From positions 62,001 through 126,000 of the IMG/VR virus record IMGVR_UViG_3300044712_002668: 64,000 nucleotides of DNA; one strand, written 5' to 3'. Shown one piece after another: positions 4,734 to 63,198 of the stretch (positions are counted from its first letter, which is position 1; every line of letters starts with the position of its first letter). The notes below the pieces were generated by a model. That model was not told where the DNA came from, ran no database searches, and saw only the letters and a list, made by a program, of their open reading frames with translations. The position numbers and the translations under genes are program-made.

Positions 4734-5096
4734 ATGGGAACTACATATATTTTTGCAAATCCAGGTCAAGTTGTACGTTTGGCTGTTCAAACTGTTGATG
4801 GGTATGGTAACCGTGCAGATGGGTATGTTCCGGTAGTTCAAAGCGTTTTGTTCCCAGACCTGTCTCCAGCTTCTAGCTATCCTTTAAATATGACAAGGAT
4901 TGATACCGGGTTTTTCGTTCATGGTGTTCAAATCCCTTCCGGCTCAACTTCTGTAGGAACTTACCTCATAAGTATTTATTATCAAACTGATTATACTTAT
5001 CCTGATGGCTATCAGGATGGCACACACCCTGTCTGGGAAACCTTTGCCATCCAAGTAGCTAAACCATTTGGTAATACCAGCGTTTCCCCTATTTGA
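4734..5096 (+). CDS. Small Ig-like putative virion protein with 3 DGY motifs
   Basis: Beta-strand pattern resembling the N-terminal domain of 6370..7269; VDGYGNRADGY and PDGY. Confidence 0.55.
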   Translation: MGTTYIFANPGQVVRLAVQTVDGYGNRADGYVPVVQSVLFPDLSPASSYPLNMTRIDTGFFVHGVQIPSGSTSVGTYLISIYYQTDYTYPDGYQDGTHPVWETFAIQVAKPFGNTSVSPI

Positions 5097-13973: not shown

Positions 13974-16900
13974 ATGACTGTATACCCTAGTGCTATAGAT
14001 GATGATCGTACAATAAACCGTATTGATGATAATTTGTCAGAACTTGGAACTCAAGTTATCAATCAAATTCGTGATGCCTTATTCTCTGTTGAGAAAACCC
14101 TTGGCACCAACCCTCAAGGCTCAAAAAGTTCTGTAGCGGAGCGTTTAAGTATTGTCATCAATCCTGATGGCACCCTCAACCTTGTTAGCTTGACAGGGCT
14201 TGGTATTGCTACATTGCCAATTCAAAATGTTCATATAGCCCCAGGTGCCGGTATCTCAGAAAGCAAGTTGGCTCTTGATTTTTCAACTTCTACCCTGAAT
14301 ACAAAAATCACTGTTGCAGATTCTCAGCTATTATCTATAGCTAATTTCTCTAATGAGATAAATTCAAACCTTCGTTTGCATGTAGCTGGCTCTCCTTTAT
14401 TCTTAGACAATTCAACATTGGCTAGACATGTAGCTAGCCACATTGACTTGAATGCCATCCCAACCGATGTCAGAGATATAGGGTATAGCTGGTCAGGTTT
14501 GATTGATAAAAACGGAAACCTTCGTTCAGCTACAACTGTAGCCTCTGCTCTTCTTGAAATAAATAATGATTTGGTATTACATGAGAATGGGGCGGCAAAT
14601 GCTCATACAGCAGCAGCGATATCGCTGGATACAAGCTCTTTTATAGAGATTCCACAAACCGCAACTACCGTTCAAGCTGGTTTTGATTACCTTGATAATA
14701 AAGAGTCTTTATCTACCGTTGTAGATAGAGCCACTATGAACAGTAACGGTATACCGTTGACAGCTAGAACCAGACTGTTGAGTTCTGCTACAGATGGTTA
14801 TACCACTAATGTTGTACCTGCTACCAAGGTAATGACATTCTTGTCAGAAACGCTTCACACATCCCCTACAGATGACCCTCAGTATGGCGATGATTGTGTG
14901 AAGTTCATACCAGATTCAAATACTAATTTTATATTTGATTCATACTTTACCAAGGTTGCTGTTGGTGATATTCTTCGTATAGATTATGGTGGAATTGAGT
15001 TTATATTTACAATAGCATCAATACGTTATACTCCTGGTTCAGAATGGATTGTAAGAATCAATGGAACCAATTATAAATCTTTATCAGATGGTTATGGTTA
15101 TGCCCGAATTGATCGTCCGTATTTTGATACAAATACAGCCGGTGTATTAGCTGTAGCCAGCGCTCCAACTGGCATGCTTACTCCAGGTTTTATGGAGAGT
15201 GTAGTTGTGGGCAGCCCAAGAGGAGCTACAGCGGTTGGTATAGCTTTTGATCCAAATCAAATAAATTCTAACCACTATAATTTGTACTTGCGTTTATATC
15301 CTAATGGAGATCCTTCTTATTATTTTGATTTATCAGGCATTGATGTATCTGGTAATGCGGGAACCACTGTAGGAGCCTATACCATTGATTCAGTTATTGA
15401 ATCCACAAACAAAGCTTTCAGGTCTTTGGGATATAACTATCGTTTCATAGCGTTCAATCATAAAGGACAGTTTGGAATAATGATTGCTGACCCATTGGGT
15501 GAGGCAAGCTTTACTATAATCAGCGGAGCTGTATCAGGAACAAGTATAGATGGTTCTTCATATCCCAAAAACATCATTGGAGATGCATTAAATGATGGTT
15601 ATGACGCTCTTGGATTTGGAGCGTATAAACTTGGACTGGCCTCCCCTGTTCCAGGCACTTATGTCAGTGCAATTACAGCCGCAAGTTTTAGTACAATCAT
15701 CATCCCTCCATTGCAGGGACGCAATGCTTATATAAATGGAACCAAGAGAGACTATTTATATAATCAAGGTCCTTGGGTTGCAACGGTATTGAATAATTAT
15801 ACTTCTTATTCATCTCCATCCCCACCACATCTTGAAACAGAATATGTAATAAACCAGAATCTTCAAAATATTGGTTTCAAACCTGGTAAAACAATTGTAA
15901 TTCAGCCAGAAAATATTACAGCGGTTGTAGATGGTTATGGTAGATTCATAATCAAAGAAGTTACATATATACCAGCATGTGGACTGGTTCCAGACCAGAC
16001 AGTAATCAGAGTATTGAACTCTGCTCATGGTTATGGAAATCCAGATCCTGTTCCAGTACCTGTGCCAGTTGGTGGACAGGTTATGTTATCATTATGTGAT
16101 GATTCTGTATCTTTTGATATGGTTCAATCAGTGGGTGATGATGGTGGTAATACATATCACAGATACCATGAAGTTTTTATAAACAATTTTGCCCATACTT
16201 TCAGCATAGAACGCGCTCGTATGGTAAAGCAAGTAAGTGTAGGTAGTTTACTTGGAACAAATAATGATAACTGGAGAATAAGAAGTGTTTCAGATTATCT
16301 GAAGGGATACAGAGATCCTTCTAATTTTGATAGACGCTATGTAAGGTTTACAGTAATTTCAGAATCAAATGCTGAGTATACAGCTAGACTAAGTGATCCT
16401 TTTGGAACAGAAACAGGACCAGTTGTTACTGGTAAAAAGAACATTCCAACAAAGTTCTATGACGATTCAAATTGTGAGTATGTAGAGATTGAATTTAAAG
16501 AACTGGGAACAAGCTCAACAACCATTGGAGATGGATATGTTGATATTGAAGTTTTCCCAAGTCTTGGCTTGGATGATGAGTTCTTTAGATTGGCTGGCGT
16601 AAGTCACAATGACACATTGGTTCGTGGAATAACTGACTTGAGAGAGTTTGGAACATTGAGTGAAAAGAATTTTACAAATTCTGCTATAGATTTTATTCAA
16701 CTCGGAGAAAAATATTTACACAATAATGGAATTGTAAGAGGTTTTGAATATATTGTAGCTAATGGATATAGTTTTTATTTCAAAGGTGGTGTAGCCCTTG
16801 TAAATGGAAAATTTGTTTCTGTTGACTCTCATTCTGTAGACTTTCCTATAACTACTGGGTATTATACATTCTTTATTTGTGTTACTGAAAATGGTAATTT

Positions 16901-21539: not shown

Positions 21540-22352
21540 ATGACGGATCAAAATTTTATAACTCCGGCTACTGGCGGATTTAGCCGATCTGATCTTTATG
21601 GTATTTACAATGTAGTCCAAAACTCTATATTCTCATACCCTAAAGAATTGGTAATAGGCATGTTGAGAGATATGTTCTCTCAAGACTCCTATTATCATTA
21701 TGTAGCAGATGAGTGGGGTTTTCCAAAAGTAAATGATCATACTGACATGCCTTTGGAAGCGGGTTATCATGATGATAACACAACTCGCATTTTCATAGGA
21801 GAGGCTTTCAGACATGATGTCATCATGTATCCAGCAATCCTGGTTAAGGCTGGAAGCTTTCGTTCCGTACCAATTTCATTGAGTAGAAATAAATATTGTA
21901 TAGAATATGAGAATACTTTATTTATTGATGGTTACGGCAATCAGGCTGTTATAAAAACTCCAAGATATTTGGAGTTGACAGGGGCATGGGAAGGGCAGCT
22001 TAATATTGATATCATTACAAGGGATATTTTTTCAAGGGATGAGATCAGTGGATTGTTGATGTTATTTTTTACTGACATTATTTATGAAGAACTCAAGAAT
22101 GCCGGGGTTATTGTAAAGCCACCCCAAGCCTCTGGACCATCAGAAGCAGAGGATAGAAACCAAGAGAAAATATATAAGTCCTCTATTACTCTGGATGTTC
22201 GTGGGGAGTGGAGAAGATTGATACCAATTTCCAGTGTTTTGGAACAAATCAATATATGCGTTGATTTTTCATCCGGCATTACCAATACAATTGCTTATAA
22301 CCTTGAAATAAATACAAAAGTTGATTTAATTTCCCAGATCAACTCTTTATAA
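21540..22352 (+). CDS. Putative tail completion/terminator protein
   Basis: Immediately upstream of the sheath; YPAILVK motif; one DGYGN. Confidence 0.5.
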   Translation: MTDQNFITPATGGFSRSDLYGIYNVVQNSIFSYPKELVIGMLRDMFSQDSYYHYVADEWGFPKVNDHTDMPLEAGYHDDNTTRIFIGEAFRHDVIMYPAILVKAGSFRSVPISLSRNKYCIEYENTLFIDGYGNQAVIKTPRYLELTGAWEGQLNIDIITRDIFSRDEISGLLMLFFTDIIYEELKNAGVIVKPPQASGPSEAEDRNQEKIYKSSITLDVRGEWRRLIPISSVLEQINICVDFSSGITNTIAYNLEINTKVDLISQINSL

Positions 22353-22437
22353 GCATATCCGCACATATATTTTAGACCGGTTCTTGTTAATACAACACGT
22401 AATAAGTACACATAAGAATAGATTAGGAGATTTTACT

Positions 22438-24921
22438 ATGGCCAGCAATATTCCAGGCGCAAGCGGTGCAGTACCAGGCGTTTATTTAGAAGCTCAAACA
22501 ATTCAACGTGGTATCAGCGTTCCGATTGGTAGTAGATTTGGTGTCATAATTGGCGAAGGGTTACGTGAAGAAGTTCTCGTATCAAATGCCAATGGTGGAG
22601 GAAGAGATGGATTCAATTCCACTTTCACATCAACCAAAGGAGCAAATGGTAGGTACTTTTTACTAGGCAAGGGCACAGATGTTGTAGCCCCTGTTATTCA
22701 AAATAGAAGTGTGCTATACAGGGATGGAATTCCTGTTACCCTAATTGAACAAACCATTGATCCAAACACTTCATTTGACAAGCGTTTTGGAGCAAGACTT
22801 GATCCAGCAACTGGACAAATCGAATTGCAAAAAGCCTCCTTTGTAGATCAGGGAGGATCTTATTTTGCAACCGGAGCTACCAATGTTGGTACTGGTGTAA
22901 TTTCAAATTTGACTCTTGCTAATACGGATGCAATTGCAGAAACCTGGTCTATTCGCTGCACAAGTGTACGTCGTGATGGTTATGGAAATCCAATTGATGG
23001 GTATGCAAAGTTTGTTGTTAGAGGCTCTGTTTCTGGTGTTATCCTTGATGGATATGGCAATCAGATTACATGGCAATCCAATGGTGTAATAACAAGCAAC
23101 GGTACTTTGTCCTTCTCTATCTCTGAGGGTGGTATTGCATTCCATGAAGGTGATTATTTCACTATTCAGATTGCTGGTGGTGGTCTTACAATAGGCGAGA
23201 CTTTATCAGCGGAATATATTTCAGAAATTGGATTGAATGCTCCAGCGTTTTATACATCAATGAATGATATCGCTGGAAAGTTTGGCTCTCCAAGTCTAAC
23301 CAATAGATTATCATTAGCGGCTCAGTTGGCATTTGATAATGGACCTCCTGGAGTGTTTGCAATTCAAGCAAAACCAGCGGTACCACGTAGATTGTCATAC
23401 AGTCTTGTAACATCTGCATCTGGATATGCCACAGCCGATGATTTGACATTTGCTCTACCATTATTGGTAACTCCAGATACAAATTCTGATATCCACTTCT
23501 TTGTAACCAATCCAACTACAAAGCTTGAAACACAGATTATACCAAATAAGGTTACATTCTATGATCCAACCATAACTTCAAATCCAAGTGGGTTTATATT
23601 TGGACAAACATATTCATACACAGTGGTTCTTGAACCTTCTGTTCAGAAATCAGGAACAGACGGTGTCTTGACTCCAACTGGAGCTTATCTTGGAGGATAC
23701 AGCGCTCAATTGGCAAGCTCATCTGTTACATTCAACATGGATGACTTGGAGTTGACAAGAAGTGTCAAGATTTATGATTCTGTCAATGGAAACAATGGTA
23801 CATTCAGTGTTATCAGCGTATCAAACGGAAAGATAAACATATATAGTGCAACACCATTTGGTACAGCAGAAACCGGAGTACGCTTCCAGGTTTTGGATTC
23901 AAGTGTCAGCAGCTCACGTATCTTGTTTACCTCTGACCTGGCTTTGACTCTAGGAGCTTCTCTTCGCTGTACATTAGTAGACAGCAAGGATGCTGATTTT
24001 TATGATGCAGGATGGGAGTTGGCTTATACAGCAGCCGAGCGCATTGATGTTGATATGGTTATCCCAGTACCAAGTCAGACAATTTCAGCAATCTTCCAGA
24101 ACGGTAAGGTTCACGTTGAGACAATGAGTAACATTGAAAACAAGCGTGAGCGTATCTTGATGATTGGAGCAATCAATGGGTTGTTACCAACAGCCGTGAC
24201 AGGTGATGTATTGGCTGCGGTTGAGGATGTTGGAATTCTGGAAGGAATTCAAGGAGATTCTGTTACTGAGATTCTTGCAGGTAATATTGAAGACCTGGCG
24301 AACTATGATGTACAGAATGCATATGGTGATAGCTACAGAGTAGTTTATTTCTATCCGGATCAGATTGTAGTCAACATTGCGGGTCAGAATACAATAGTTG
24401 ATGGCTTCTTCATGGCAGCGGCTGCAATGGGATACTTCTCAGGTAGCTTGCAGACAGCAGAGCCTTTGACCAACAAGACAATCGCAGGGTTCTCAATTAG
24501 TAACACCAGGACATTCTCTCCAACCGTTACCAAGAGCCTGGTTAATGCTGGAATTACTTTGGTAACACAGGCAGCGGGTGGTGGAAGAGTTATCTGGGGC
24601 AAGACAACAACCACCAGTGGTCAGCCAGAGGAAGAAGAGATTAGCATTGTATTCTGCAGGGATGCAATCTCCAAGGCTTTGAGAACTGGATTCCAACCTT
24701 ATATTGGACATGCAGAAACTCCAACCTTGCCAGTAACCTTGCAAAACACTGCTGCATCACTTTGTACAGCATTCATTACACAGAGATTGATTTCAGCTTA
24801 TAATGGACTTACTGTTGGAAGAGATCCTGTAGAGCCAAGACAATGGAATATCTCGTTGAATGTACAACCAATTTATCCAGTCAATTGGATATACATCAAG
24901 GTTAATGTAGGACTTATATAA
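22438..24921 (+). CDS. Tail sheath protein
   Basis: N-terminal PGVY; C-terminal HVETMSN..ER, EPLTNKTIAGF, LVNAGITLV, EEISIV, QPIYPVNWIYI; AGGAG RBS before ATG 22438. Confidence 0.88.
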   Translation: MASNIPGASGAVPGVYLEAQTIQRGISVPIGSRFGVIIGEGLREEVLVSNANGGGRDGFNSTFTSTKGANGRYFLLGKGTDVVAPVIQNRSVLYRDGIPVTLIEQTIDPNTSFDKRFGARLDPATGQIELQKASFVDQGGSYFATGATNVGTGVISNLTLANTDAIAETWSIRCTSVRRDGYGNPIDGYAKFVVRGSVSGVILDGYGNQITWQSNGVITSNGTLSFSISEGGIAFHEGDYFTIQIAGGGLTIGETLSAEYISEIGLNAPAFYTSMNDIAGKFGSPSLTNRLSLAAQLAFDNGPPGVFAIQAKPAVPRRLSYSLVTSASGYATADDLTFALPLLVTPDTNSDIHFFVTNPTTKLETQIIPNKVTFYDPTITSNPSGFIFGQTYSYTVVLEPSVQKSGTDGVLTPTGAYLGGYSAQLASSSVTFNMDDLELTRSVKIYDSVNGNNGTFSVISVSNGKINIYSATPFGTAETGVRFQVLDSSVSSSRILFTSDLALTLGASLRCTLVDSKDADFYDAGWELAYTAAERIDVDMVIPVPSQTISAIFQNGKVHVETMSNIENKRERILMIGAINGLLPTAVTGDVLAAVEDVGILEGIQGDSVTEILAGNIEDLANYDVQNAYGDSYRVVYFYPDQIVVNIAGQNTIVDGFFMAAAAMGYFSGSLQTAEPLTNKTIAGFSISNTRTFSPTVTKSLVNAGITLVTQAAGGGRVIWGKTTTTSGQPEEEEISIVFCRDAISKALRTGFQPYIGHAETPTLPVTLQNTAASLCTAFITQRLISAYNGLTVGRDPVEPRQWNISLNVQPIYPVNWIYIKVNVGLI

Positions 24922-24943: not shown

Positions 24944-25624
24944 ATGGCAAATAATTATCCTTTAACAGGAACTCCACTAAAAACCAATACAGCTTCTTCT
25001 GGTCTTGAACAAGCCACTAATACCGCTGTTAGTACCAACATTATTATCCTTGTAGAAGGTCAAGCTGTTGGTGCCGTTCAAAGCATCAACTATGGTGAGT
25101 CAAGAACAATTCACTTTGTTGATGAAATTGGAACAGATGGCCACATTGACAGCGTACCTCAAAAGGCAGTTGACATTCAAGGCTCTGCAAAACGTGTAAG
25201 GTTTGCAGGAAAGAGAATCGCACAAGCCTTCCAAAGAGGGTTTGTACACGTCTCTGCACAACGTAGACCTTTTGATATAGTTATCGTTGATTATTTCCAA
25301 GCTAAAGGAATTGTAGGATCTATTGATAATGCACAAACTACACCAGGTGCCATCTCAACAACCCTCAAGAATTGCTGGATTACAAGGCTTCAAACTGCAT
25401 ATCAAACAAATGAGTTTGTCATCACTGAAGATATGGACTTCCAGGCTGAGACTATTTACAGCAGATTACATAGTGATAGTCAAACGGTACCAGTTGGAAC
25501 TAATAGTAACGTTGGGGGAGATAAAACGGACACTATTGAACGTTCTGCTGACTATGGTGCTCGTAGAGGTGCTCTTGATGCATCTGGTCTTATGGCTATT
25601 ACACAAACCGGCGAATTGACTTAA
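24944..25624 (+). CDS. Tail tube protein
   Basis: Follows the sheath; VGAVQSI, EIG, PFDIVIVD, TTLKNCWIT, ITEDMDFQAE tube-type pattern. Confidence 0.8.
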   Translation: MANNYPLTGTPLKTNTASSGLEQATNTAVSTNIIILVEGQAVGAVQSINYGESRTIHFVDEIGTDGHIDSVPQKAVDIQGSAKRVRFAGKRIAQAFQRGFVHVSAQRRPFDIVIVDYFQAKGIVGSIDNAQTTPGAISTTLKNCWITRLQTAYQTNEFVITEDMDFQAETIYSRLHSDSQTVPVGTNSNVGGDKTDTIERSADYGARRGALDASGLMAITQTGELT

Positions 25625-51221: not shown

Positions 51222-54191
51222 ATGATGACAACACGAAACTCAGTCTCTATTATACAAAATCGTTGGTATGACGGTCAACGCGTTGATCAGCAGGATTTAG
51301 TTACCGATCAAACCAGGAATGTGGGTACAGATGCGGCGATTATAAATAATCACTTTGGCTCAGGTGTTCTACCTAATGCAAGTTTACCTGTAACAGTTTT
51401 CGATACAGATAACCTTCTTCCAGATCAGGTAGCATTGATAGCTTCTGGTGATTTTGACGGTACAGGTTTAGAACCTATTGGTCAACCAAGTGATACCAGC
51501 AATGGTAATCAGTTATCTGTTGAGTTGATGGATTCAGATTTAAACGGACCATCTACTGCATTTGGTAGAATGAGTACAAAGGTACTTATAATAGGTCTTG
51601 ACTTTCAAGGATCTCTTCAGTACGAAAGGTTTTACTTCTATAAGAAAGAAAAACAAGTTTCTCAAAAACATTATGCAAAAGTGTTATGTGTTTTCTTCAA
51701 TGATTTTATAGGTAACACAAACTGTTCAAGGGATTTGGGCGGCAGGGTTGTAATCAAAGAAGCTAACAGTTTTGAGTTGTCCAGGGATCCTGTCATGACA
51801 GCTCAGGATACCCAACCAAACATATTTTTTCGTGATTTCAAGATATCAACATTTTCCGGTGGAACAAATCCTACGGTTACATTGTATCAAGCATTGCAGG
51901 CTGGTATAGGAAACCAATATTCAGTTGATGGTTTAAATATTACCACCACCGCTCTTGAAAACATCTATTTGCCTTCTGGGGATGTAACTACAAAGATAGG
52001 GCAAAAATTTCTAGCTCTAACAAATAACATTCAAAAAATAAGCTTACTTTTAGGTGTTGACCAGGATACCACAACTACTACTGAACATTGGTTTGATTGG
52101 AGTGGAGAGCTTATTGTAAGTGTTTATGCCTTACAAACAACTGTTTCTTCACCAAGCGATCTTGTACCAACTTTAGCTATAGAGTTTGATCCGGCTGCAC
52201 AGCCAATTACTCAGTTCAGTTTGAATCAACAATCATTAAGGGATTTAGGTTATGTACTAAACAATGTTGCTCAACCTATAGATCTTGTTTTTAGTGCTTC
52301 CCCTCTGGGTAGTTCTACAAACTCTGTAATAACGGTTGGTCAATATTATGCGGTTGTTATTAACAGGGCAGGAGATGCAAGTACTGGTAGTATTTTTGCA
52401 GCAGCAGGGGCCACTTCAAACTCTGATACCCGTGTAAGCATCTACTCAGGATTATGGACAGATATACCACAAGAAAGCTTATGGTTTCAGGTATGGACAG
52501 ATGCTGCAAAAGTATCTGATGGACAGGGTTATGATTCTGGTAATGGTATTCAAATACCTAAAACAATACAGAACAGCAGTGGTGCCTATGTTGATTACTC
52601 ATTTGGTTTGAATCAATTTTCTGATACAGGGCATAACACTTTAAATACTGCAATTATAGAAGCTGTCTTGACTCAAAGTCAGCAAGAACAAGATGAAAGA
52701 ACTGGTAGTCCAGTTTATTCTAGACAGCAATATACACCATCACTTAGTTTTGTTACAAACTCAACGCTTCAAACAATCCAAGAAACTGGTAATCCTTTAA
52801 TCATTGGAAGTACAAGGGATACAAACCCTATTAGTAACTATTCTGTAACCGGAACCCAACCATATCCTGGTTTGGTTAAAGGAGATACCTATACCCTTGT
52901 AGCTCCAGATCCATCCGTAATAGCACAAAACCTTATAGGTAGCAAATTGATACCAAATGATGATTGTGCAGGTTTGGATTACCGTATTATGAAAGTGTCA
53001 ATCTGTACCGATGGGTATGGTGATGTAAATGGTGATGGGGTTATTGATGAAGCAGATGCCAATAGAGCTATTGCACTTATTGGCGAATCCCTTTCTTCAG
53101 CATCGACACAACAAAAAATTATTGATGGTTACATATCTACTCTTGAAATATTAAGAGCTGACGTTAATGGTAATGGTATTGTTGATGCTTATGATGCTCA
53201 GTTGATTGCATCATTCATTGCCAGAGATATTTCAACATTCCCATACGGAAGATCCTTTCAGCATGTTGAATTTCAGGTTCAACAGAGTATAGGAAGATAT
53301 GATGGATACTTTGATTGTGATGGGTATATCAGACTAGACGGTTATATTGGGCAGAACAAAATAGACCCTGCAAGTCTTGGTATTTATGCTCAAATTTATG
53401 ATGGGTATATTATACCACCACAAATGGATAAGGCAGATCCTGCTTGGACAACGGTACCATATGTACCTGTACCATTCCTGATTACACCTCAGGCATTCTG
53501 GCAAGATTATCAAGTTCAATTCAGTAGTGCTACAAGAATGGTACCTGCTGTATTTACATCTCAGAGCGGAGGCAGAGTATCAACCTCGACTGTTTGTACA
53601 AGCCCAAGCATAACTAGCTGTAGTAATGTTACTGATATTATAACACAGACAGATCCTGGTAAAAATGATATCTTTATTCCAGATAACTTGATTATAAGAG
53701 GAAACATTTTAAATGTTGATGGTACTTTTTATAAGCAAGATTTTGAGGTAAAGCATTTCGTCTTGGAGCTTCCACCAGAAGTATTCTCACAAGCATCTAT
53801 TGATGTTTTCCATAAATTGGTAGCAGATGCAGGGGATGGTTTTACATCTGCTGGATATCCTGCAATGAGATATAGTGATTGTACCACTGTAGGGTTGGAT
53901 GCTTTGATTTATAACAGACTTCGTTTTGGAGTATCTATTCAATCAATAGTACCCAACCTTGATGGTTATAGTGTCGCTGATGGTTATGGCGTAATTGTTG
54001 ATGACTTGATTGGTATATACATGGATCCTATTTATGGAATTATGACAATTACAGCAAAGGATCTTGACGAGGATTTGACCAAACCAAACTTGATTACAAA
54101 GATCGAGATTGTGGTGTATGCCAAGAAAGCTGGATGGCAAAATACTACTCAAATAATTCCACCAAATCAAATCATGGGACTTGTTACTTGA
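51222..54191 (+). CDS. Baseplate/fibre-attachment protein with a dockerin-like EF-hand pair and 8 DGY motifs
   Basis: N-terminal WYDGQRVDQQDL..DQ; GDVNGDGVIDEADA and ADVNGNGIVDAYDA. Confidence 0.55.
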   Translation: MMTTRNSVSIIQNRWYDGQRVDQQDLVTDQTRNVGTDAAIINNHFGSGVLPNASLPVTVFDTDNLLPDQVALIASGDFDGTGLEPIGQPSDTSNGNQLSVELMDSDLNGPSTAFGRMSTKVLIIGLDFQGSLQYERFYFYKKEKQVSQKHYAKVLCVFFNDFIGNTNCSRDLGGRVVIKEANSFELSRDPVMTAQDTQPNIFFRDFKISTFSGGTNPTVTLYQALQAGIGNQYSVDGLNITTTALENIYLPSGDVTTKIGQKFLALTNNIQKISLLLGVDQDTTTTTEHWFDWSGELIVSVYALQTTVSSPSDLVPTLAIEFDPAAQPITQFSLNQQSLRDLGYVLNNVAQPIDLVFSASPLGSSTNSVITVGQYYAVVINRAGDASTGSIFAAAGATSNSDTRVSIYSGLWTDIPQESLWFQVWTDAAKVSDGQGYDSGNGIQIPKTIQNSSGAYVDYSFGLNQFSDTGHNTLNTAIIEAVLTQSQQEQDERTGSPVYSRQQYTPSLSFVTNSTLQTIQETGNPLIIGSTRDTNPISNYSVTGTQPYPGLVKGDTYTLVAPDPSVIAQNLIGSKLIPNDDCAGLDYRIMKVSICTDGYGDVNGDGVIDEADANRAIALIGESLSSASTQQKIIDGYISTLEILRADVNGNGIVDAYDAQLIASFIARDISTFPYGRSFQHVEFQVQQSIGRYDGYFDCDGYIRLDGYIGQNKIDPASLGIYAQIYDGYIIPPQMDKADPAWTTVPYVPVPFLITPQAFWQDYQVQFSSATRMVPAVFTSQSGGRVSTSTVCTSPSITSCSNVTDIITQTDPGKNDIFIPDNLIIRGNILNVDGTFYKQDFEVKHFVLELPPEVFSQASIDVFHKLVADAGDGFTSAGYPAMRYSDCTTVGLDALIYNRLRFGVSIQSIVPNLDGYSVADGYGVIVDDLIGIYMDPIYGIMTITAKDLDEDLTKPNLITKIEIVVYAKKAGWQNTTQIIPPNQIMGLVT

Positions 54192-54274: not shown

Positions 54275-55022
54275 ATGGAAATTACGTGTATTAAATGTAA
54301 CACTAAACTATTGGCTAGTGCTGATAATTTTCAATGGAGAAATGATAGTAAAAAGTGGAGACCAGTATGTAAACCATGTATATCACTTAATGCAAAAAAA
54401 AGATATTCTAAAAATAAAGAAGTGATAAAAACCAAAGCGTCAGAATATCGTAAAAAAAATCGTATTAAAATAATAAACTTCATGAGAGAATATAATTATA
54501 GAGATGAAGTCCAGTTAAGAATGAAACAATATCGTATTGATAATAGAAAAAAATTAAGACAAAAAGAAAAAGCATGGAGACAAAAAAATCCTGAAAAAGC
54601 AAAATTGATTTCTCAAAGAAAAACAAAGAAAAGAAACAAAAACGCTTTGGTTAGAATAAGACAAAATGTAAGTAGAGCTATTGGGTTAGCATTGAAAAGA
54701 AAAGGATCCTCAAAACAAGGAGATTCTATATTTTCATATTTACCTTATTCATTTCAAGATTTAAAAAAAACATATTGAAAAACATTTTGAACCATGGATG
54801 AATTGGGATAATTATGGTGTATACAAAGCAAAAGAGTGGGATGATAATAATCAATTAACGTGGAAATGGCAAATAGATCATATAATACCGCATTCTGAGT
54901 TTTTATATTCATCAATGAAAGATCCTGTTTTTATAAAATGTTGGAGTTTAGATAATTTAAGACCATATTCTGCTAAAAATAATTGTATAGATGGGTGTTT
55001 TAGAAGCAGACATAAAGGATAA
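54275..55022 (+). pseudogene. HNH-type homing endonuclease split by a frameshift
   Basis: CIKC...CKPC Zn finger and basic helix (54275..54778) continue as HIEKHFEPWMNWDNYG...WQIDHIIP...NLRPYSAKNN if one A is removed from the A8 run at 54763-54770. Confidence 0.8.
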
Positions 55023-55023
55023 T

Positions 55024-56151
55024 ATGAGGATAAAAATTCAACAATTTTTGTTTGGACAAGGAGCCCATTCATGGGCGTTGGTTGGTAAAAATATTGGCAG
55101 AGCATTAATTCATCTAGGCCATGAAGTAGATTTTGTTTCTACTGATGGGTTTGAAGATAAATTTTGTCCAAATGATTTAAAACCTTTTGTCAAAAAAGAT
55201 CCTGTAGGAGAGTATGATTGTCAAATCAGTTACACAGCTCCTCACAATTGGCCGAACTATTTATCTTATGGAAAAAAGAATCGTTTTGCTATATGGAACT
55301 ATGAGTATAACAACAAAAAAGTAGATCAAGGTTATACGGCTTTGCTACAAGGATTCGGAAAGTACTACAAAAATACAGATATGGTATTACCTTCTTCTAA
55401 TTTTACAAAAGAAGTTTTTAAAAGTATGATGATTCCAGAAGATAAGATGGTTGTTATTCCTCATGGAATTGATCTGGAACAATTCTCTACAACTAAAAAG
55501 TTTCCTCTAAAAACAAAGAAATCAAAAAAGATTCTTTTGAATATAGCTCAACCTCATAGAAGGAAAGCTATCCCATTAGCTTTAGAAGCTTTCGGAAAAG
55601 CTTTTACTAAAGATGATGATGTTTGTTTAGTAGCTAAAGTTTTTAAACAAAACAATAAAGGACAAGCTTTCGATGTAGATTTTACCGGAATGTACAAAAC
55701 ATTTGAAACCAAATATCCTAAACATGCAGAGGTAGAGTTTGTACATAACTACATAGATAACATAGCTGAAATATATAATTCTTGTGATGTTAATTTTTCT
55801 GCTACATATGCAGAATGTTGGCATCTTCCTTCTTTAGAAGCTTTAGCATGTGGATTAATTAATGTTGTTCCTAGATATGGAGGACAATTAGATTTCTGTG
55901 ATGATTTTAATTCTTTACTTATAGATGGTAATGTAGTTCGTGCTCCACGTGATCATCAATACTGGAAGTTTAATCCTTTTGCTGTTCATTTCCAAATAGA
56001 TACGAATGACGCTGCGCAGAAGTTGCGGTGGGCGGTTCATCCAGAAGAAGGGAAAGTTCTTAAAGAAAAATTCGTGTCGAGCATGTCCGAAACAGCCCAG
56101 AAATTCTCCTGGGAGAATGCTGTCAGAAAGATTCTTGATCTATGCACGTAA
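55024..56151 (+). CDS. Glycosyltransferase family 4 (GT-B)
   Basis: VIPHGID, RKAIPLALEAF, ECWHLPSLEALACG; start at ATG 55024. Confidence 0.88.
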   Translation: MRIKIQQFLFGQGAHSWALVGKNIGRALIHLGHEVDFVSTDGFEDKFCPNDLKPFVKKDPVGEYDCQISYTAPHNWPNYLSYGKKNRFAIWNYEYNNKKVDQGYTALLQGFGKYYKNTDMVLPSSNFTKEVFKSMMIPEDKMVVIPHGIDLEQFSTTKKFPLKTKKSKKILLNIAQPHRRKAIPLALEAFGKAFTKDDDVCLVAKVFKQNNKGQAFDVDFTGMYKTFETKYPKHAEVEFVHNYIDNIAEIYNSCDVNFSATYAECWHLPSLEALACGLINVVPRYGGQLDFCDDFNSLLIDGNVVRAPRDHQYWKFNPFAVHFQIDTNDAAQKLRWAVHPEEGKVLKEKFVSSMSETAQKFSWENAVRKILDLCT

Positions 56152-56279
56152 CCTTACGTCACTTTGATCTTTTCGTGATCAATAAATAAATGCAAAAAGC
56201 TGCGCCAATTAAGTATATATATATTAACTATTAATTAAGATCATTAATAGCAAGTACCATGCCAGATGGAGAACAATAG

Positions 56280-56975
56280 ATGACAAAGTTAGCGATAGTG
56301 GTTTTAGCCTATAACAACTGGAGTTATACGAAACAATGTTTGAGTGATTTGCTTCAGCTTCCTGAAGATCATTCAATTATCCTCGTAGATAACGCCAGTT
56401 CAGATGAAACGAAAAATGTAAGTAAGATCTTTAATGATAAGAAATTGGATGTAATAGTTAATGAAGATAACTATGGTTTTGCTAAAGGGTGTAATATTGG
56501 ATTTAAAAAAGCTCAGGAAAAAAGATCTGAGAATGTCATGTTTTTGAACAATGATATCAGGGTGCGTTCTGAACATAAAAACTGGACGGACAGGGTGCTG
56601 TCCCAACTTTCTTCAAAAACGCTTCTAGGGCCAACTGTAGGTATTCTGGATGGTGATCTCAGGTTCGTTTGTGAGGCGGGTAAGATTCCAGAAAAATATA
56701 CCAACACCTACATGAGTGGTTGGTGTGTTACAGCCACAATGGAAACTTGGAATGAACTGGTATTACCAGGGTATGAGGGGCCGTTTTCCGAGGAGTTTGG
56801 CAAGGCTTTTTTTGAAGACAGCGATCTTGGGTTCAGGGCAAGAAATCAAAACATAAAATTTAACATAGTAGATATTCCTGTACATCATTTTGGTCACAAG
56901 ACAACAGACAAATTGAATACAAATGAGCTTTATAAAAATGCCAGAGAAATTTTCGTAAGGAAGTGGAAAAAATGA
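56280..56975 (+). CDS. Glycosyltransferase family 2
   Basis: IILVDNASSDET, NYGFAKGCNIG, FLNND, FFEDSDLG. Confidence 0.9.
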   Translation: MTKLAIVVLAYNNWSYTKQCLSDLLQLPEDHSIILVDNASSDETKNVSKIFNDKKLDVIVNEDNYGFAKGCNIGFKKAQEKRSENVMFLNNDIRVRSEHKNWTDRVLSQLSSKTLLGPTVGILDGDLRFVCEAGKIPEKYTNTYMSGWCVTATMETWNELVLPGYEGPFSEEFGKAFFEDSDLGFRARNQNIKFNIVDIPVHHFGHKTTDKLNTNELYKNAREIFVRKWKK

Positions 56976-57802
56976 AATTGCATATATTAACTTTAACTTG
57001 GAATGGAAAGAAAAGGCTGGAGGCATTGGCTCCAACCTTGGTTTCTTCCTGTAATCATTTGTCTCATGATCCTATATGGTATATAAGAGATAATGGTTCT
57101 AAAGATGATACTTTAGAATATCTGATGAGTAATGATATTCAAAAAGATAAACCTTTAAAATTAAAGGTTTTGTCTGTAGATCATAATAGGGATTCATTTG
57201 CCAGGTGTGTCAATTCTCTACTGGAGATGGCCAACCCAGCAGATGAGGATCTTGTTATGTTGTTGAATGATGATGTTGTTTTTTTCAAAAATGACAGCAT
57301 TCAAAAAATGATAGATTTACAGGACAAGACTGGGGCAGGGATAGTTGGAGCCAGGTTATTGTATCTTAACACAAACAAACTTCAACATGCCGGGATAATC
57401 TTCAGTAAGAGATATAATTCATTGCCATTTCATTTTCGTCCCGGTGAAGAGTCGGATAAGAACTCTGAAAAGAACAGATATTTCCAAGCTGTTACAGCGG
57501 CATGTTGTATAGTGAAAGCATCATCACTGAAAAAGATCAATGGCATGGATGAGGGTTTTAGATGGGCCTTTGATGATGTGGATATGAACTTTCAGATAGG
57601 TAAGAATCTTGGGGAGAAGATAGCTTATTGTGGTAATGTAGGTATTTATCATGAAGAAAGCGTATCTCTTAAAAAGAACCCTGTAAATAAATTGTTTATG
57701 GATGATAATGTAAAACGATTCCGCTCTAAATGGAATGGTAAATATACTATAGACCATGATATGTATTTGGGTAATTCTTTATATAATGAAATTAAAGTTT
57801 AA
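56972..57802 (+). CDS. Glycosyltransferase family 2
   Basis: DNGSKDDT, LLNDD, LQHAG, AVTAAC, FDDVD. Confidence 0.9.
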   Translation: MKLHILTLTWNGKKRLEALAPTLVSSCNHLSHDPIWYIRDNGSKDDTLEYLMSNDIQKDKPLKLKVLSVDHNRDSFARCVNSLLEMANPADEDLVMLLNDDVVFFKNDSIQKMIDLQDKTGAGIVGARLLYLNTNKLQHAGIIFSKRYNSLPFHFRPGEESDKNSEKNRYFQAVTAACCIVKASSLKKINGMDEGFRWAFDDVDMNFQIGKNLGEKIAYCGNVGIYHEESVSLKKNPVNKLFMDDNVKRFRSKWNGKYTIDHDMYLGNSLYNEIKV

Positions 57803-58739
57803 AAATAAGTTCTTTCCATTTGCTTCGGGGATATCTTGGGAAATTGATCAGGGTAAATATGTAGTACCAAAGATAGACGGTGAAACGTGGAAGAGCGTAT
57901 TGAGCAATAAGGATTTACACATAGTTGTATTCGGGGGTTTGTTAGAATCATTTTTTTCATTTTCTTATGCTGAGGCATTGTCTTCATTAGAGCCTGATAA
58001 AGATTTGTATTGGATAGGTGATGATAAATACAAATGCCTATTAAAGGTTAATGGTCTGTGTAAGCCTGGTCAATCAGGTTTGACAAAAACTGATTTGGAA
58101 AAATATCCAGTTCCCTTGTTTTTCGACAAAGAAGACAATGCTTACTTTAATGTGTTGCATGATTATAAGACAAAGCTAAGCTATTGGGGTCAACACCCAA
58201 AAGAAAATAAACTTCCAATACTAAAACAAATATATAATAATCTAATGATCCCTTGGAATAATTATATTCCAAAAACAAGATCATTAGATTTTTCTTTTTA
58301 TAATCATATCAGTATTAAAAATAAACTATCACATAAAACCATACTTATTATACATGATGAAGAAGATAACGCATTGAATTGGAACAAGCACAACATAAGA
58401 GAATTTGCTTTTTTGGTTGGTAAGCATGGTTTCAAAGTGTGTGTTGCAACGCATCATAGCGGAATGTTCTATGATTCAAAAGTTATAGCTATTGAGTATG
58501 ATATTTTGAAGATATTACAACTGATTACAAAGTCATGGATGGTACTATCATCAAAGATAGACTGGTTGTTTATCGCAATGATGATATCCAATGCACACAT
58601 AGTTTCAAAACATCAGGATGGAATTTATAATTTATTTGACAATGCAGAGTTCATAGGAGCAACAAACGTTATATTTACAGATAAGACTTGGATGTCTCCA
58701 ATGGACGTATGCGCAATTTGTGCGGAAGAGGAAAAATGA
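57786..58739 (+). CDS. Divergent GT-B fold protein (GT9/heptosyltransferase-like)
   Basis: GGLLESFFS..AEAL resembles the GT9 N-terminal motif; lies within the GT operon. Confidence 0.4.
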   Translation: MKLKFKNKFFPFASGISWEIDQGKYVVPKIDGETWKSVLSNKDLHIVVFGGLLESFFSFSYAEALSSLEPDKDLYWIGDDKYKCLLKVNGLCKPGQSGLTKTDLEKYPVPLFFDKEDNAYFNVLHDYKTKLSYWGQHPKENKLPILKQIYNNLMIPWNNYIPKTRSLDFSFYNHISIKNKLSHKTILIIHDEEDNALNWNKHNIREFAFLVGKHGFKVCVATHHSGMFYDSKVIAIEYDILKILQLITKSWMVLSSKIDWLFIAMMISNAHIVSKHQDGIYNLFDNAEFIGATNVIFTDKTWMSPMDVCAICAEEEK

Positions 58740-59494
58740 GTTCAACTTCAATAATGATGGTAACCTATAATAGGCTTGAGTTAACAAAACGTATGTTGTC
58801 TTCTTTATGTAAGACGGTACATTCACCATTCAATTTGGTTATAATAGATAACGCTTCTACAGATGGAACGGTTGAATACCTTCAAAACAAAATAGATACT
58901 GAATTTAAAACAGATCATTTAAGAAATTTATTTACTATATTTAATAAAGAAAACAAAGGTATAGCTATTGGAAGAAACCAGGCATTGAAAAATGGGGTTG
59001 ATGTATTCAACAGTGATTGGTTGGTGACATTGGATAATGATGTAGAGATGCCGGATGGATGGCTGGAGGAGTGTCAGAATATTCTGCAGGCGAATAGGGC
59101 TTATGGGGCGATTGGGGTCAATATGGAGAACAAGCCTTATCCCATAGTGACAAAGAATGGTTTTACGTTTCAGGATAAACCTGCGGGTAATCTTGGTACA
59201 GCTTGTATGGTATTTCCAAAGACCACTCAGAAATTATTGGGTTATTTCAACACAGAGTATGGTCCATATGGGGAAGAGGATGCGGATTTTGGAATGAGGT
59301 TACGTGTATCAGGTTTGAAGCTTGGATACATTGAAAGAATGGGTACGCATTTTGGAGAGGGTGAATTAGATAAAGGCGAGTATCGTGAGTACAAGACAGC
59401 TTGTCATAATAAGAATCTGAAGAAGTTCAATGAGAATTGTGCGCTATATGCACAAGGAAAGAAGAAATTATATATGCCTTATAGTGAGGGTTGA
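58736..59494 (+). CDS. Glycosyltransferase family 2
   Basis: TYNRLELT, IIDNASTDGT, NKGIAIGRN, LDND, YGEEDADFG. Confidence 0.9.
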   Translation: MSSTSIMMVTYNRLELTKRMLSSLCKTVHSPFNLVIIDNASTDGTVEYLQNKIDTEFKTDHLRNLFTIFNKENKGIAIGRNQALKNGVDVFNSDWLVTLDNDVEMPDGWLEECQNILQANRAYGAIGVNMENKPYPIVTKNGFTFQDKPAGNLGTACMVFPKTTQKLLGYFNTEYGPYGEEDADFGMRLRVSGLKLGYIERMGTHFGEGELDKGEYREYKTACHNKNLKKFNENCALYAQGKKKLYMPYSEG

Positions 59495-61497: not shown

Positions 61498-62418
61498 AAC
61501 ATCAATAATCCTTTCAAAAAAACTTTCATGGGATATTATTTTTAATAACCCTTCAGGATTGTGTAGGTTTTCTTTAACGGCATTTGTCATATTATTGAAA
61601 TTATCTTCGTTATAATTAATTACTTCATTATATAATGAATCCATTTTTACAGATATTTTTTTACCATCCTTTATAACGAATTTTCTTAAATCGATGTAAC
61701 TATCTGGTGAGAATTTATAATCATCTATATTATGACATCCCATATATAAAGGTACAGTGCCAGAATACCATACGTCTGGCATTTTTTCACTTAAATAGTT
61801 CCAGGAATATACTGGATCGTAGCAGTTTTCTGAACATAAAGAAAATTTTACCTCTTTTAGTATTGCGTGTTTGTCTGGAGCAGGTCCTTTATAATAAGGC
61901 TTACTTATTGGTATTTGTCCATACCAAGAAACGGGAAAACCTTTGTTGTGAAAAAGATCCGCTATAAAGCTTCTTAATTCATATAATGAAGAAATATGAT
62001 TTGTTGTTTTATTATTAGCGATAATTACTAATTCATTTCTTTTTTCATTCCATGGTTTCCAGCCATTTATAATATTTTGTGCGGAGGGTGGTTGAAACCA
62101 TGATGGGTGATTTATTGTAGTAACTTTATGTGATATAGCTGTATTTTCAAAAGCTTTTCCACACCATGCGAATATGTGTTTATGTTTATCCAAAAAATTA
62201 AGATTATAATCACATGGGTTGATACACATTGGTTCTAGAACAAGGAAACAATCGTTTGGTTGTGGGTTTTGTCCGGAGTACCAATTTATAGCTAGATTAC
62301 ACATGTCATCTCTGCGGTGAGATGACATCCATACTTTTCCTTTTTCATTTTCATATCTTGGAGTTGTTACTGGTCCATGATCCAGATAAATCATATTTAT
62401 ATTTATTTTTTCGTTCAT
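61480..62418 (-). CDS. Glycosyltransferase family 10 (alpha-1,3/4-fucosyltransferase-like)
   Basis: KFSLCSENC....NYLSEKMPDVW..GTVPLYMG matches the GT10 signature. Confidence 0.82.
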   Translation of the reverse strand: MNEKININMIYLDHGPVTTPRYENEKGKVWMSSHRRDDMCNLAINWYSGQNPQPNDCFLVLEPMCINPCDYNLNFLDKHKHIFAWCGKAFENTAISHKVTTINHPSWFQPPSAQNIINGWKPWNEKRNELVIIANNKTTNHISSLYELRSFIADLFHNKGFPVSWYGQIPISKPYYKGPAPDKHAILKEVKFSLCSENCYDPVYSWNYLSEKMPDVWYSGTVPLYMGCHNIDDYKFSPDSYIDLRKFVIKDGKKISVKMDSLYNEVINYNEDNFNNMTNAVKENLHNPEGLLKIISHESFFERIIDVLIGIK

Positions 62419-62443
62419 GTACTACCTTGATATATTTGTTGGT

Positions 62444-63196: not shown

Positions 63197-63198
63197 AC

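What the first reader, a model, noticed from the sequence alone, without database searches (positions are those of the whole stretch)
22975..23055. Same DGYGNxxDGY spacing in the sheath and in an unrelated 120-aa protein
The sheath has RRDGYGNPIDGY and LDGYGNQ within an inserted domain. ORF 4734 has VDGYGNRADGY, and the putative tail terminator has IDGYGNQ. A convergent extended motif (DGYGN, 4 copies; DGYG, 8 copies) in non-homologous proteins suggests a preferred recognition context. With many sheath copies per tail, the tag would coat the whole tail.
Basis: partly seen in the sequence, partly recalled or inferred. Interest (0 to 1): 0.65.

Follow-up and report, generated by a model that had tools for sequence, protein, structure and literature searches.

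The report
Conserved DGYGN hairpin loops in tail proteins
A short Asp-Gly-Tyr-Gly-Asn loop recurs and is strongly conserved in the tail sheath, the tail terminator and a small Ig-like protein of an uncultivated huge phage; it is the visible tip of a ten-fold excess of Asp-Gly-Tyr in this clade's virion proteins, and is most likely a tyrosine-tipped surface hairpin rather than a proven modification tag.

Summary
DGYGN occurs four times and DGYG eight times in real ORFs, at the stated places. The 5-mer recurrence alone is weak evidence. Two other results are strong. First, DGY is the most over-represented tripeptide of this 336-kb phage (94 observed, 17.9 expected), and the excess lies only in the virion block (82 vs 8.1). 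DGF is not enriched. Second, each motif is a conserved island in 120 sheath, 63 terminator and 14 ORF4734 homologues.

The sheath AF2 model (pLDDT 87) shows both DGYGN copies as five-residue loops closed by a beta-bridge. They lie in a roughly 160-residue domain inserted into the conserved sheath core, and such domains face away from the tube. ORF4734 is an MG/filamin-like Ig sandwich with the motif in its beta2-beta3 loop. The terminator is not homologous to either. Homology between the sheath domain and ORF4734 is undecided (hhalign 58%, then 19%). Distant sheaths keep only D-x-x-G-x-P.

My best reading is a tyrosine-tipped structural or contact hairpin. A cluster of seven or eight glycosyltransferase genes is syntenic with the tail genes in all 10 related genomes checked, so it stays open (about 0.17).

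The parts
22438..24921 (+). Contractile tail sheath gene (827 aa from the ATG; the TTG at 22384 is an upstream artefact of ORF listing)
   Evidence: PHROG tail-sheath families phrog_2839, 279 and 23. AF2 model pLDDT 87.4. VIA-align Z 33.6 to the phage 812 sheath and Z 29 to the R-pyocin sheath, with about 320 core residues aligned. Homologues start at MxANIPGA.
22750..23238 (+). First additional (non-core) beta-rich domain of the sheath, about residues 105-267, which carries all three DGY sites
   Evidence: phrog_23 aligns only from residue 267 onward, at profile position 62. Only about 320 of 827 residues match the minimal sheath core. DSSP shows all-beta strands at 119-260. The boundaries are approximate.
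22975..22989 (+). DGYGN copy 1 of the sheath (D180-N184)
   Evidence: Conservation in 120 homologues: D 118, G 102, Y 97, G 120, N 82, then P 117. DSSP bridge residues R179 and P185 flank a 5-residue loop; pLDDT 86-92.
22996..23004 (+). Second DGY of the DGYGNxxDGY unit (D187-Y189)
   Evidence: Conservation D 115, G 120, Y 118 of 120. Absent from sheaths of 44-47% identity, which have RGQ, REQ or AQT here.
23047..23061 (+). DGYGN copy 2 of the sheath (D204-N208)
   Evidence: Conservation D 119, G 116, Y 117, G 120, N 111 of 120. DSSP bridges at L203 and Q209. Distant sheaths have D-[SEQ]-[YF]-G-Q-P.
21540..22352 (+). Tail (sheath) terminator-like protein, 270 aa, directly upstream of the sheath
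   Evidence: ESM-Atlas structural neighbours: Phage_tail_terminator_9, SP10_terminator, and 'Gp177 family' (the gene before the sheath in phage G); T4-gp15_tss by features. No Pfam, PHROG or PDB sequence hit.
21927..21941 (+). DGYGN of the terminator-like protein (D130-N134)
   Evidence: Conservation in 63 homologues: D 63, G 58, Y 58, G 61, N 53, within variable flanks. The rare replacements of G-Y are polar (NN, DN, TD, AN).
4734..5096 (+). ORF4734, a 120-aa Ig-like (MG/filamin-type) beta-sandwich protein
   Evidence: AF2 pLDDT 84.8. Z 9.0 to a Salmonella alpha-2-macroglobulin MG domain, and filamin repeats at Z 7.6-8.4. Atlas TM 0.57-0.62, including an MG2 cluster. BFVD neighbours are small phage proteins and minor-tail or fibre domains. 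No Pfam or PHROG family.
4797..4826 (+). DGYGNRADGY of ORF4734 (D22-Y31), in the loop between strands 13-19 and 34-39
   Evidence: The family consensus is DGYGxRxDGYVP. The second DGY is invariant in 14 sequences; N is variable. For the loop position.
24944..25624 (+). Tail tube protein candidate (no DGY)
   Evidence: phrog_985 virion structural protein, E 3e-7. It lies directly after the sheath and is conserved in the related loci.
54991..63933 (.). Glycosyltransferase cluster at the end of the tail-fibre genes. It is context for the 'tag' hypothesis, not shown to act on the motif.
   Evidence: Pfam hits: GT4/GT1 at 54991-56151; GT2 at 56280-56975, 56963-57802, 58688-59494 and 62417-63196; GT11 at 63199-63933; weak GT10 at 61480-62418 on the minus strand. 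Syntenic GT2 clusters lie 31-54 kb downstream of the sheath in 10 of 10 related records.
15087..15098 (+). DGYG in the 1734-aa fibre-like protein (second copy at 15930-15941)
   Evidence: The site at aa 372 is conserved 0.87/0.83/0.77 in 30 homologues, against a protein mean of 0.32.
53010..53021 (+). DGYG in the 989-aa dockerin-bearing virion protein (second copy at 53979-53990; 8 DGY in all)
   Evidence: The first copy directly precedes the dockerin Ca-binding loop: Dockerin_1 at aa 599-664, E 6e-9.

Best explanation
DGYGN is a self-contained five-residue beta-hairpin loop. In this clade of huge phages it has become the preferred way to tip hairpins of peripheral beta-sandwich domains and fibres with a tyrosine.

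In the sheath, two such loops plus a third DGY sit in the first additional domain (about residues 105-267). This domain is inserted into the conserved sheath core, so it lies on the outside of the tail, away from the tube. In ORF4734 the same arrangement (strand, DGYGxxxDGY, strand) is the beta2-beta3 connection of a small MG/filamin-like Ig sandwich. In the terminator-like protein a single DGYGN closes another hairpin.

Asp (N-cap, Asx-turn), the second Gly and the following Asn or Pro form the fold-determining skeleton, because they survive in distant homologues. The central Gly-Tyr puts a Tyr hydroxyl at the loop tip. That Tyr is kept by selection. Phe does not replace it, and the rare replacements are polar, so it is probably solvent-exposed.

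The inferred role is a contact residue. It could serve lateral contacts between accessory domains and neighbouring virion proteins, weak adhesion to host-surface glycans as proposed for phage Ig-like domains, or both.

Shown here: the motif, its conservation, its loop geometry in the models, its location in a non-core domain, and the clade-wide, virion-specific DGY excess. Inferred: outward orientation, exposure of Tyr, and the contact or adhesion role.
For: Conservation as islands: sheath, terminator, ORF4734.

DGY residues are more conserved than other D, G and Y residues of the same proteins: 0.68/0.65/0.78 vs 0.41/0.48/0.34.

DSSP of the confident sheath model shows beta-bridges at R179/P185 and L203/Q209 around both DGYGN copies. 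In ORF4734 the motif lies in the loop between strands 13-19 and 34-39.

Only about 320 residues align to minimal sheaths (Z 29-34), and phrog_23 starts at residue 267. The motif domain is therefore an insertion. Additional sheath domains are mostly Ig-like and lie away from the tube contact (PMC9230969).

Sheaths of 44-50% identity keep D-x-x-G-x-P but vary the inner residues and lack the second DGY.

DGY is 82 vs 8.1 in the virion block and 12 vs 9.8 elsewhere; DGF is 12 vs 8.4. In 80 related loci DGY is 548 vs 62. The T4 control gives only 10 vs 2.8, three of them in GIY-YIG endonucleases.

The internal virion proteins (tube, tape measure, 1740-aa hub) have no DGY.
Against: No coordinates were available, so solvent exposure of the tyrosines and the orientation of the domain in an assembled sheath were not measured.

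A purely structural turn does not by itself explain a ten-fold, Tyr-specific, virion-restricted excess.

Strict conservation in a six-copy terminator does not fit host adhesion. It points to assembly contacts or to recognition by a common factor.

A conserved glycosyltransferase cluster in the same module keeps a modification role open.

The resemblance to the D-x-x-G-N-P hairpin of bacterial Ig-like (Big/MG) domains is recalled from memory and was not tested. Pfam finds no such family here.
Confidence: 0.5

Rival explanations
1. Modification tag. The DGY hairpin tip is the acceptor site recognised by phage-encoded cytoplasmic glycosyltransferases. Sheath, fibres and other exposed virion proteins would then be glycosylated, for example O-linked to Tyr, and the tail would be sugar-coated.
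For: A cluster of seven or eight GT genes (GT4/GT1, four GT2, GT11, weak GT10) lies directly after the fibre genes. It is syntenic with the tail genes in 10 of 10 related records.

The DGY excess is restricted to the virion block, is Tyr-specific, and is absent from the internal tube, tape measure and hub.

The motif sits in loops of a peripheral domain.

The record has no phosphoglycosyl-transferase initiator, no Wzy_C ligase and no thymidylate-synthase-like hydroxymethylase. Nothing therefore points to a lipid-carrier or 5hmC-DNA route.

Tyr-O-glycosylation exists in Gram-positive S-layers (PMC2943079).
Against: There is no direct evidence of any modification, and no precedent for a DGY sequon.

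Phage GT clusters can also glycosylate DNA (bioRxiv 10.1101/2023.12.21.572611) or host envelope glycans. The record is only 78% complete, and the Tet_JBP control search was uninformative.

Non-virion proteins are not depleted of DGY (12 vs 9.8).

Distant sheaths lose G, Y or the whole second DGY while their genomes keep GT clusters.

The motif is equally conserved in a six-copy terminator, where coating has little value.
Confidence: 0.17
2. Common ancestry, not convergence. The sheath's additional domain and ORF4734 are copies of one shuffled Ig-like module, and the DGYGxxxDGY spacing is inherited.
For: hhalign of the two families aligns 46 columns covering strand, DGYGNxxDGY, strand and the next GY site, at probability 57.8%, E 1e-4. 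Both have the same order of elements: strand, 14-residue loop, strand. Ig-like domains are commonly exchanged among phage structural proteins (PMC9230969).
Against: Probability falls to 19% over 23 columns when distant sheath sequences are included. BLASTP similarity is limited to 22 residues. Distant sheaths lack the second DGY, so the extended match may be derived within the sheath lineage. The terminator copy is clearly non-homologous, so at least one recurrence is independent.
Confidence: 0.3
3. Interface mimicry. The DGYGN hairpin is the element by which one sheath ring touches the next. The terminator, and possibly ORF4734, present the same hairpin to the same sheath surface at the tail's end.
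For: The motif is shared by the sheath and the protein that caps it, and it is the most conserved patch of the terminator's central region. Additional domains of the phage 812 sheath are reported to contact neighbouring subunits (PMC9230969).
Against: No complex was modelled. It does not explain the DGY excess in fibres and many other virion proteins. Known terminator-sheath contacts use the sheath core, not the outer domains (established knowledge of T4 gp15-gp18, not tested here).
Confidence: 0.12
4. Chance recurrence of a short peptide, with no meaning.
For: On average 131 different 5-mers occur in three or more ORFs in shuffled proteomes of this genome. The motif was picked post hoc.
Against: All three families conserve it across 30-66% identity. 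DGY has z=18. No shuffle of 100 reaches the observed DNA-level count. The same excess appears in 80 related loci.
Confidence: 0.02

Closest known systems
Multi-domain contractile tail sheaths of large phages (T4 gp18, phage 812, phiKZ gp29; 'type 3' sheaths of Evseev et al. 2022, PMC9230969)
   Same: The conserved N- plus C-terminal core fold (Z 25-34, about 320 residues). Additional beta-rich domains inserted after the first ~100 residues and again mid-chain. The gene order terminator, sheath, tube.
   Different: At 827 aa it is larger than the solved examples. There is no significant sequence match to any PDB chain, and only the C-terminal third hits PHROG or Pfam models. The additional domain carries a clade-specific double DGYGN signature that has not been described.
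Ig-like accessory domains on phage virions (Hoc-type, Big-type and MG/filamin-like E-set sandwiches)
   Same: ORF4734 has this fold. The sheath insertion is all-beta, with the same strand-loop-strand element. The proposed role, weak surface adhesion or bracing, is the one discussed for such domains.
   Different: No Pfam Ig family is matched. The Tyr-tipped DGYGN loop and its proteome-wide excess are not features reported for these domains.
Virion protein glycosylation by virus-encoded glycosyltransferases (mycobacteriophage capsid and tail subunits; chlorovirus major capsid protein). Recalled from established literature, not read here.
   Same: Several soluble GT genes are embedded in or next to the structural module. 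A short atypical acceptor context would be expected.
   Different: No glycan has been shown here. The known phage cases use C-terminal Ser/Thr-rich tails and the chlorovirus uses Asn. A Tyr in a DGY hairpin would be a new acceptor.
Tyrosine O-glycosylation of Gram-positive S-layer proteins (Paenibacillus alvei SpaA, Thermoanaerobacter; PMC2943079)
   Same: The glycan is O-linked to specific tyrosines of a repetitive surface lattice protein. The dockerin domain and a Clostridia-binned homologue hint at a Firmicutes-type host.
   Different: That system uses a lipid-linked glycan and a Wzy_C-type oligosaccharyltransferase outside the membrane. No Wzy_C or Bac_transf gene is found in this record, and virions assemble in the cytoplasm.

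Membership tests
Contractile tail sheath (phage / CIS / T6SS sheath superfamily) | [quoted passage not shown] | tested here: met
   VIA-align Z 33.6 (rmsd 2.4, 319 aligned) to the phage 812 sheath, Z 29.2 to the R-pyocin sheath, Z 24.9 to T4 gp18. Foldseek E 3e-14.
Contractile tail sheath (phage / CIS / T6SS sheath superfamily) | Sequence-profile match to sheath families | tested here: met
   phrog_2839 E 6.5e-13 and phrog_279 E 2.8e-12. Pfam Phage_sheath_1 reaches only 19.2 bits, below its 31.4 cut-off. Some homologues carry PF17482.
Contractile tail sheath (phage / CIS / T6SS sheath superfamily) | Additional domains located on the outer face, away from the tube | tested here: inconclusive
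   The insertion is shown by the alignment ranges. The outward orientation is inferred from the literature. No coordinates were available to build the helical assembly.
Tail (sheath) terminator, T4 gp15-like / Phage_tail_terminator_9 | Fold similarity and position directly upstream of the sheath gene | tested here: inconclusive
   The synteny is conserved in 63 loci. Atlas structural neighbours have TM 0.49-0.59 to terminator clusters, but the Atlas model has pLDDT 0.59. No Pfam, PHROG or PDB profile hit.
Ig-like E-set beta-sandwich (MG / filamin type), for ORF4734 | Seven-stranded sandwich superposable on MG or filamin domains | tested here: met
   Z 9.0 (99 aligned) to a Salmonella A2M MG domain, Z 8.7 to TEP1r, Z 8.4 to filamin C. 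An Atlas MG2 cluster gives TM 0.57. These values are borderline, because Z 7-8 is common background.
Ig-like E-set beta-sandwich (MG / filamin type), for ORF4734 | Membership of a curated sequence family (Big_1, MG2, Filamin ...) | tested here: not met
   No Pfam or PHROG family at E <= 0.1. No PDB profile hit.
Protein glycosylation sequon | A covalent glycan demonstrated on the motif residue | not testable with these tools
   This needs mass spectrometry or glycan staining of virions or co-expressed proteins.
Protein glycosylation sequon | Cognate glycosyltransferases encoded with the substrates | tested here: met
   Seven or eight GT genes at 54991-63933. They are syntenic in 10 of 10 related records. 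Their substrate is unknown.
Tyrosine corner of Greek-key beta-sandwiches | Tyr OH hydrogen-bonded to the backbone 3-5 residues earlier; consensus L-x-P-G-x-Y | tested here: not met
   The sequence context here is D-G-Y, with Gly at Y-1 and Asp at Y-2, which is not the consensus. The hydrogen bond itself could not be checked without coordinates.
Homologous domain shared by the sheath insertion and ORF4734 | Significant profile-profile similarity beyond the motif | tested here: inconclusive
   hhalign 57.8% over 46 columns, but 19.4% over 23 columns with a broader alignment.

The most novel reading that the evidence does not exclude
The DGY hairpin tip is the acceptor determinant of a virion-glycosylation system encoded by the conserved GT cluster of this huge-phage clade. 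Sheath outer domains, fibres, the terminator and small Ig-like proteins would be glycosylated in the cytoplasm on, or next to, the tyrosine. The result would be a sugar-coated contractile tail and a new, structure-defined bacterial-virus sequon.
Probability: 0.17. Interest if true: 0.85.

Novelty: new variant of a known kind. Interest (0 to 1): 0.5.

Why it matters
Additional domains of large-phage sheaths are common, but their purpose is unknown. This clade carries a sharply defined, Tyr-specific signature that is easy to mutate and that marks exposed virion proteins. It sits next to a conserved glycosyltransferase cluster.

If the tyrosines are contact residues, they give a handle on how accessory domains brace long tails or stick to host surfaces. 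If they are modified, this would be the first acceptor motif for phage tail glycosylation and the first such system in huge phages. That would bear on host recognition, immune evasion and the annotation of the many GT genes in giant phage genomes.

Either way, the ten-fold DGY excess is a simple sequence marker for virion proteins in these otherwise unannotatable genomes.

Tried and rejected
1. DNA-level cause (repeat, mobile element, methylation or restriction motif): rejected. Codons at the sites vary and follow genome usage, and the pattern is frame- and strand-specific.

2. Composition artefact: rejected. DGY exceeds both the independent and the first-order Markov expectations, and DGF is not enriched.

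3. General property of phage structural proteins: only partly. The T4 structural 50 kb gives 10 vs 2.8, with 3 of the 10 in homing endonucleases. Phage G gives 4 vs 2.6.

4. EF-hand or dockerin-type calcium loop: considered for DGYGNPIDGY and rejected, because the residue spacing does not fit D-x-D-x-D-G. Only the DGYG at 53010 abuts a real dockerin.

5. Sequence relatives with solved structures for the sheath, the sheath domain, ORF4734 and the terminator: none found.

6. Phage GenBank collection: only distant C-terminal sheath hits (Eggerthella LE2-3, Bacillus phage G), and nothing for ORF4734.

7. Literature: no paper links DGYGN or a DGY motif to phages. The Zarschler 2010 paper on Tyr-glycosylation sites is not held.

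8. An HMM scan of the whole proteome with the ORF4734 and sheath-domain profiles was meant to show whether the many DGY sites belong to one repeated domain. The script machine was lost, so this and all further scripted statistics were not done.

9. Complex prediction, the big representative search, the third word search and the reads tools were not used.

10. No alternative genetic code is indicated. All large ORFs are open under table 11.
Full report
**What the window is**

The window is bases 62001-126000 of a single 335,988-bp virus record with 37.9% GC. IMG/VR labels the record a provirus, and CheckV estimates it at 78% complete. It belongs to a large clade of uncultivated huge phages. The sheath has about 500 homologues at E <= 1e-3, on contigs up to 463 kb, and 343 related stretches in IMG/VR. 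Nearly all genes in the window are on the + strand and form the tail, baseplate and fibre module.

**The observation**

- The sheath gene really starts at the ATG at 22438 and encodes 827 aa. Homologues start with MxANIPGA.
- In this numbering the sheath has DGYGN at 180-184, DGY at 187-189 and DGYGN at 204-208, which is window 22975-23061.
- ORF 4734-5096 (120 aa) has DGYGNRADGY at residues 22-31.
- ORF 21540-22352 (270 aa) has DGYGN at residues 130-134.
- DGYGN occurs four times and DGYG eight times in real ORFs of the window, as stated.

**Is it more than chance?**

A 5-mer shared by three proteins is not remarkable in a 107,000-residue proteome. Residue shuffles give 131 such 5-mers on average. 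Two other facts make the motif real.

The first is the DGY excess.
- The core tripeptide DGY is the most over-represented tripeptide of the whole proteome: 94 observed vs 17.9 expected, z = 18. It is also top under a first-order model.
- The excess lies entirely in the virion block at genome 46-170 kb: 82 vs 8.1 there, against 12 vs 9.8 elsewhere.
- DGF shows no comparable excess (12 vs 8.4 in the virion block). At DNA level the DGF-coding pattern is 17 vs 7.0, against 39 vs 5.4 for DGY.
- The tube, the tape measure and the 1740-aa hub have no DGY.
- Codons at the sites follow genome usage, and the pattern is specific to frame and strand.
- Eighty related loci show the same excess, 548 vs 62.
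- The T4 structural region shows only 10 vs 2.8, with three of the ten in GIY-YIG endonucleases. Phage G shows 4 vs 2.6.

The second is conservation. Each copy of the motif is a conserved island.
- In 120 sheaths of 55-66% identity the residue counts are D 118, G 102, Y 97, G 120, N 82, P 117, then D 115, G 120, Y 118. For the second DGYGN copy they are 119, 116, 117, 120 and 111.
- In 63 terminator homologues the counts are 63, 58, 58, 61 and 53, inside variable flanks.
- In 14 ORF4734 homologues DGYGxRxDGYVP is conserved and only N varies.
- Over the proteins that could be aligned, D, G and Y inside DGY are conserved at 0.68, 0.65 and 0.78. Elsewhere in the same proteins they are at 0.41, 0.48 and 0.34.

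**What the proteins are**

- The 827-aa protein is a contractile sheath. It matches PHROG sheath families. Its AF2 model has pLDDT 87.4. It scores Z 33.6 against the phage 812 sheath, 29.2 against the R-pyocin sheath and 24.9 against T4 gp18.
- Only about 320 residues align to these cores, and phrog_23 picks up only at residue 267. Residues ~105-267 and ~345-520 are therefore additional domains.
- A survey of modelled sheaths found such domains to be mostly Ig-like and located away from the tube-contacting side (PMC9230969). The motif-bearing domain is the first of the two.
- ORF 21540 is a terminator-like protein, by synteny and by Atlas structural neighbours: Phage_tail_terminator_9, SP10_terminator, the Gp177 family and T4-gp15_tss. 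It has no HMM support.
- ORF4734 is a small Ig-like sandwich of the MG/filamin type, with pLDDT 84.8 and Z 9.0.

**Anatomy of the motif**

- In the sheath model both DGYGN pentapeptides are loops of exactly five residues, closed by single beta-bridge residues: R179/P185 and L203/Q209. The regions have pLDDT 86-92.
- In ORF4734 the motif occupies the loop between strands 13-19 and 34-39.
- Flank preferences over all 94 DGY sites are weak: T, V or A before the motif, and G, V or A after it.
- In sheaths of 44-50% identity the sites read D-[SG]-Y-G-A-P-x-R-G-Q and D-[SEQ]-[YF]-G-Q-P.
- D, the second G and the following P or N are therefore the fold skeleton. The inner G-Y and the second DGY are clade-specific.
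- The rare replacements of G-Y in the terminator are polar (NN, DN, TD, AN). This suggests an exposed rather than a buried tyrosine.

**Homology or convergence?**

- The terminator is not related to the other two beyond the motif. hhalign gives 11.7% and 4.3%.
- For ORF4734 against the sheath domain, hhalign gives 57.8% over 46 columns, with both motif sites in register. With a more diverse sheath alignment this falls to 19%. BLASTP sees only 22 residues.
- At least one recurrence is therefore independent. The extended DGYGxxxDGY match may be either inherited or convergent.

**Mechanism**

The best-supported reading (0.5) is a Tyr-tipped structural or contact hairpin on peripheral domains. The skeleton makes the turn, and selection keeps a tyrosine hydroxyl at its tip for contacts. 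Those contacts could be between accessory domains and neighbouring virion proteins, with host-surface glycans, or both.

**The 'tag' idea**

The 'tag' idea cannot be tested here, but it gained circumstantial support.
- Directly after the fibre genes lies a cluster of GT4/GT1, four GT2, GT11 and a weak GT10.
- GT2 clusters occupy the same position, 31-54 kb downstream of the sheath, in all ten related records examined.
- The record shows no Bac_transf, Wzy_C, thymidylate-synthase-like or 2OG-oxygenase genes. The Tet_JBP search was uninformative.
- Tyr-linked glycans are known in Gram-positive S-layers.

Several points count against it.
- Phage GTs may instead modify DNA or host glycans.
- No DGY sequon is known.
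- Distant sheaths lose the DGY while their genomes keep GT clusters.
- A six-copy terminator conserves the motif equally well.

I put the tag idea at about 0.17.

**Verdict**

The sheath is a new member of a known family. The DGYGN and DGY signature is an undescribed variant feature of accessory virion domains, with one testable and more exciting reading.

Noticed in passing
window 54991-63933: A cluster of seven or eight glycosyltransferase genes (GT4/GT1, four GT2, GT11 fucosyltransferase, weak GT10) directly after the tail-fibre genes. GT2 clusters sit at the same relative position in 10 of 10 related huge-phage records. Their substrate is unknown.
   Followed up: partly
window 51222-54191 (aa 599-664): A 989-aa virion protein with eight DGY carries a type I dockerin domain (E 6e-9). 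This hints at a cohesin-bearing, Clostridia-like host, or at cohesin-dockerin attachment of a virion part.
   Followed up: no
window 19179-19805 (-), GC peak at 19350-19800: A 208-aa minus-strand ORF with a lipoprotein-like N-terminus, an Ala/Gly/Ser-rich stretch and a Cys-rich C-terminus. Its GC reaches 60% in a 36% GC window. It matches no family and has no homologue in the related loci, so it looks like a recently acquired moron.
   Followed up: partly
window 21075-21443 (-) and 19864-20358 (-): An Hsp20/alpha-crystallin small heat-shock protein (E 1e-18) and a HAD_SAK_2 phosphatase-like protein (E 1e-13). Both are encoded on the opposite strand, between the fibre gene and the terminator.
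   Followed up: no
window 2311-3408, 3422-3727, 5089-6315 (-): A class-V aminotransferase (E 2e-31), an HNH endonuclease and an SF1 (UvrD/PIF1-like) helicase are interspersed with structural genes next to ORF4734.
   Followed up: no
window 48125-48154: A compact run DGYDGYVDGYVTGY in the 2216-aa protein (44567-51217): three DGY within ten residues.
   Followed up: no
G000:C1:153456-158525 and 162321-167546 (outside the window): Two fibre-like proteins of about 1700 aa carry 10 and 11 DGY. Some sit in internal repeats: V-DGY-F-[AS]-[SG]-WGL about every 50 aa, and ST-DGY-[ST]-G every 117 aa.
   Followed up: no
ORF4734 (window 4734-5096); The identical ORF4734 protein is recorded on a 454,833-bp contig, whereas this record is 335,988 bp and 78% complete. 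The full genome is probably about 430-460 kb, like its complete relatives.
   Followed up: no
G004:C1:231875-232396, G005:C1:308070-308459, G006:C1:282973-283344: In more distant clade members a GT2 domain lies inside open frames of 928-1163 aa. This suggests glycosyltransferases fused to large, possibly structural, proteins.
   Followed up: no
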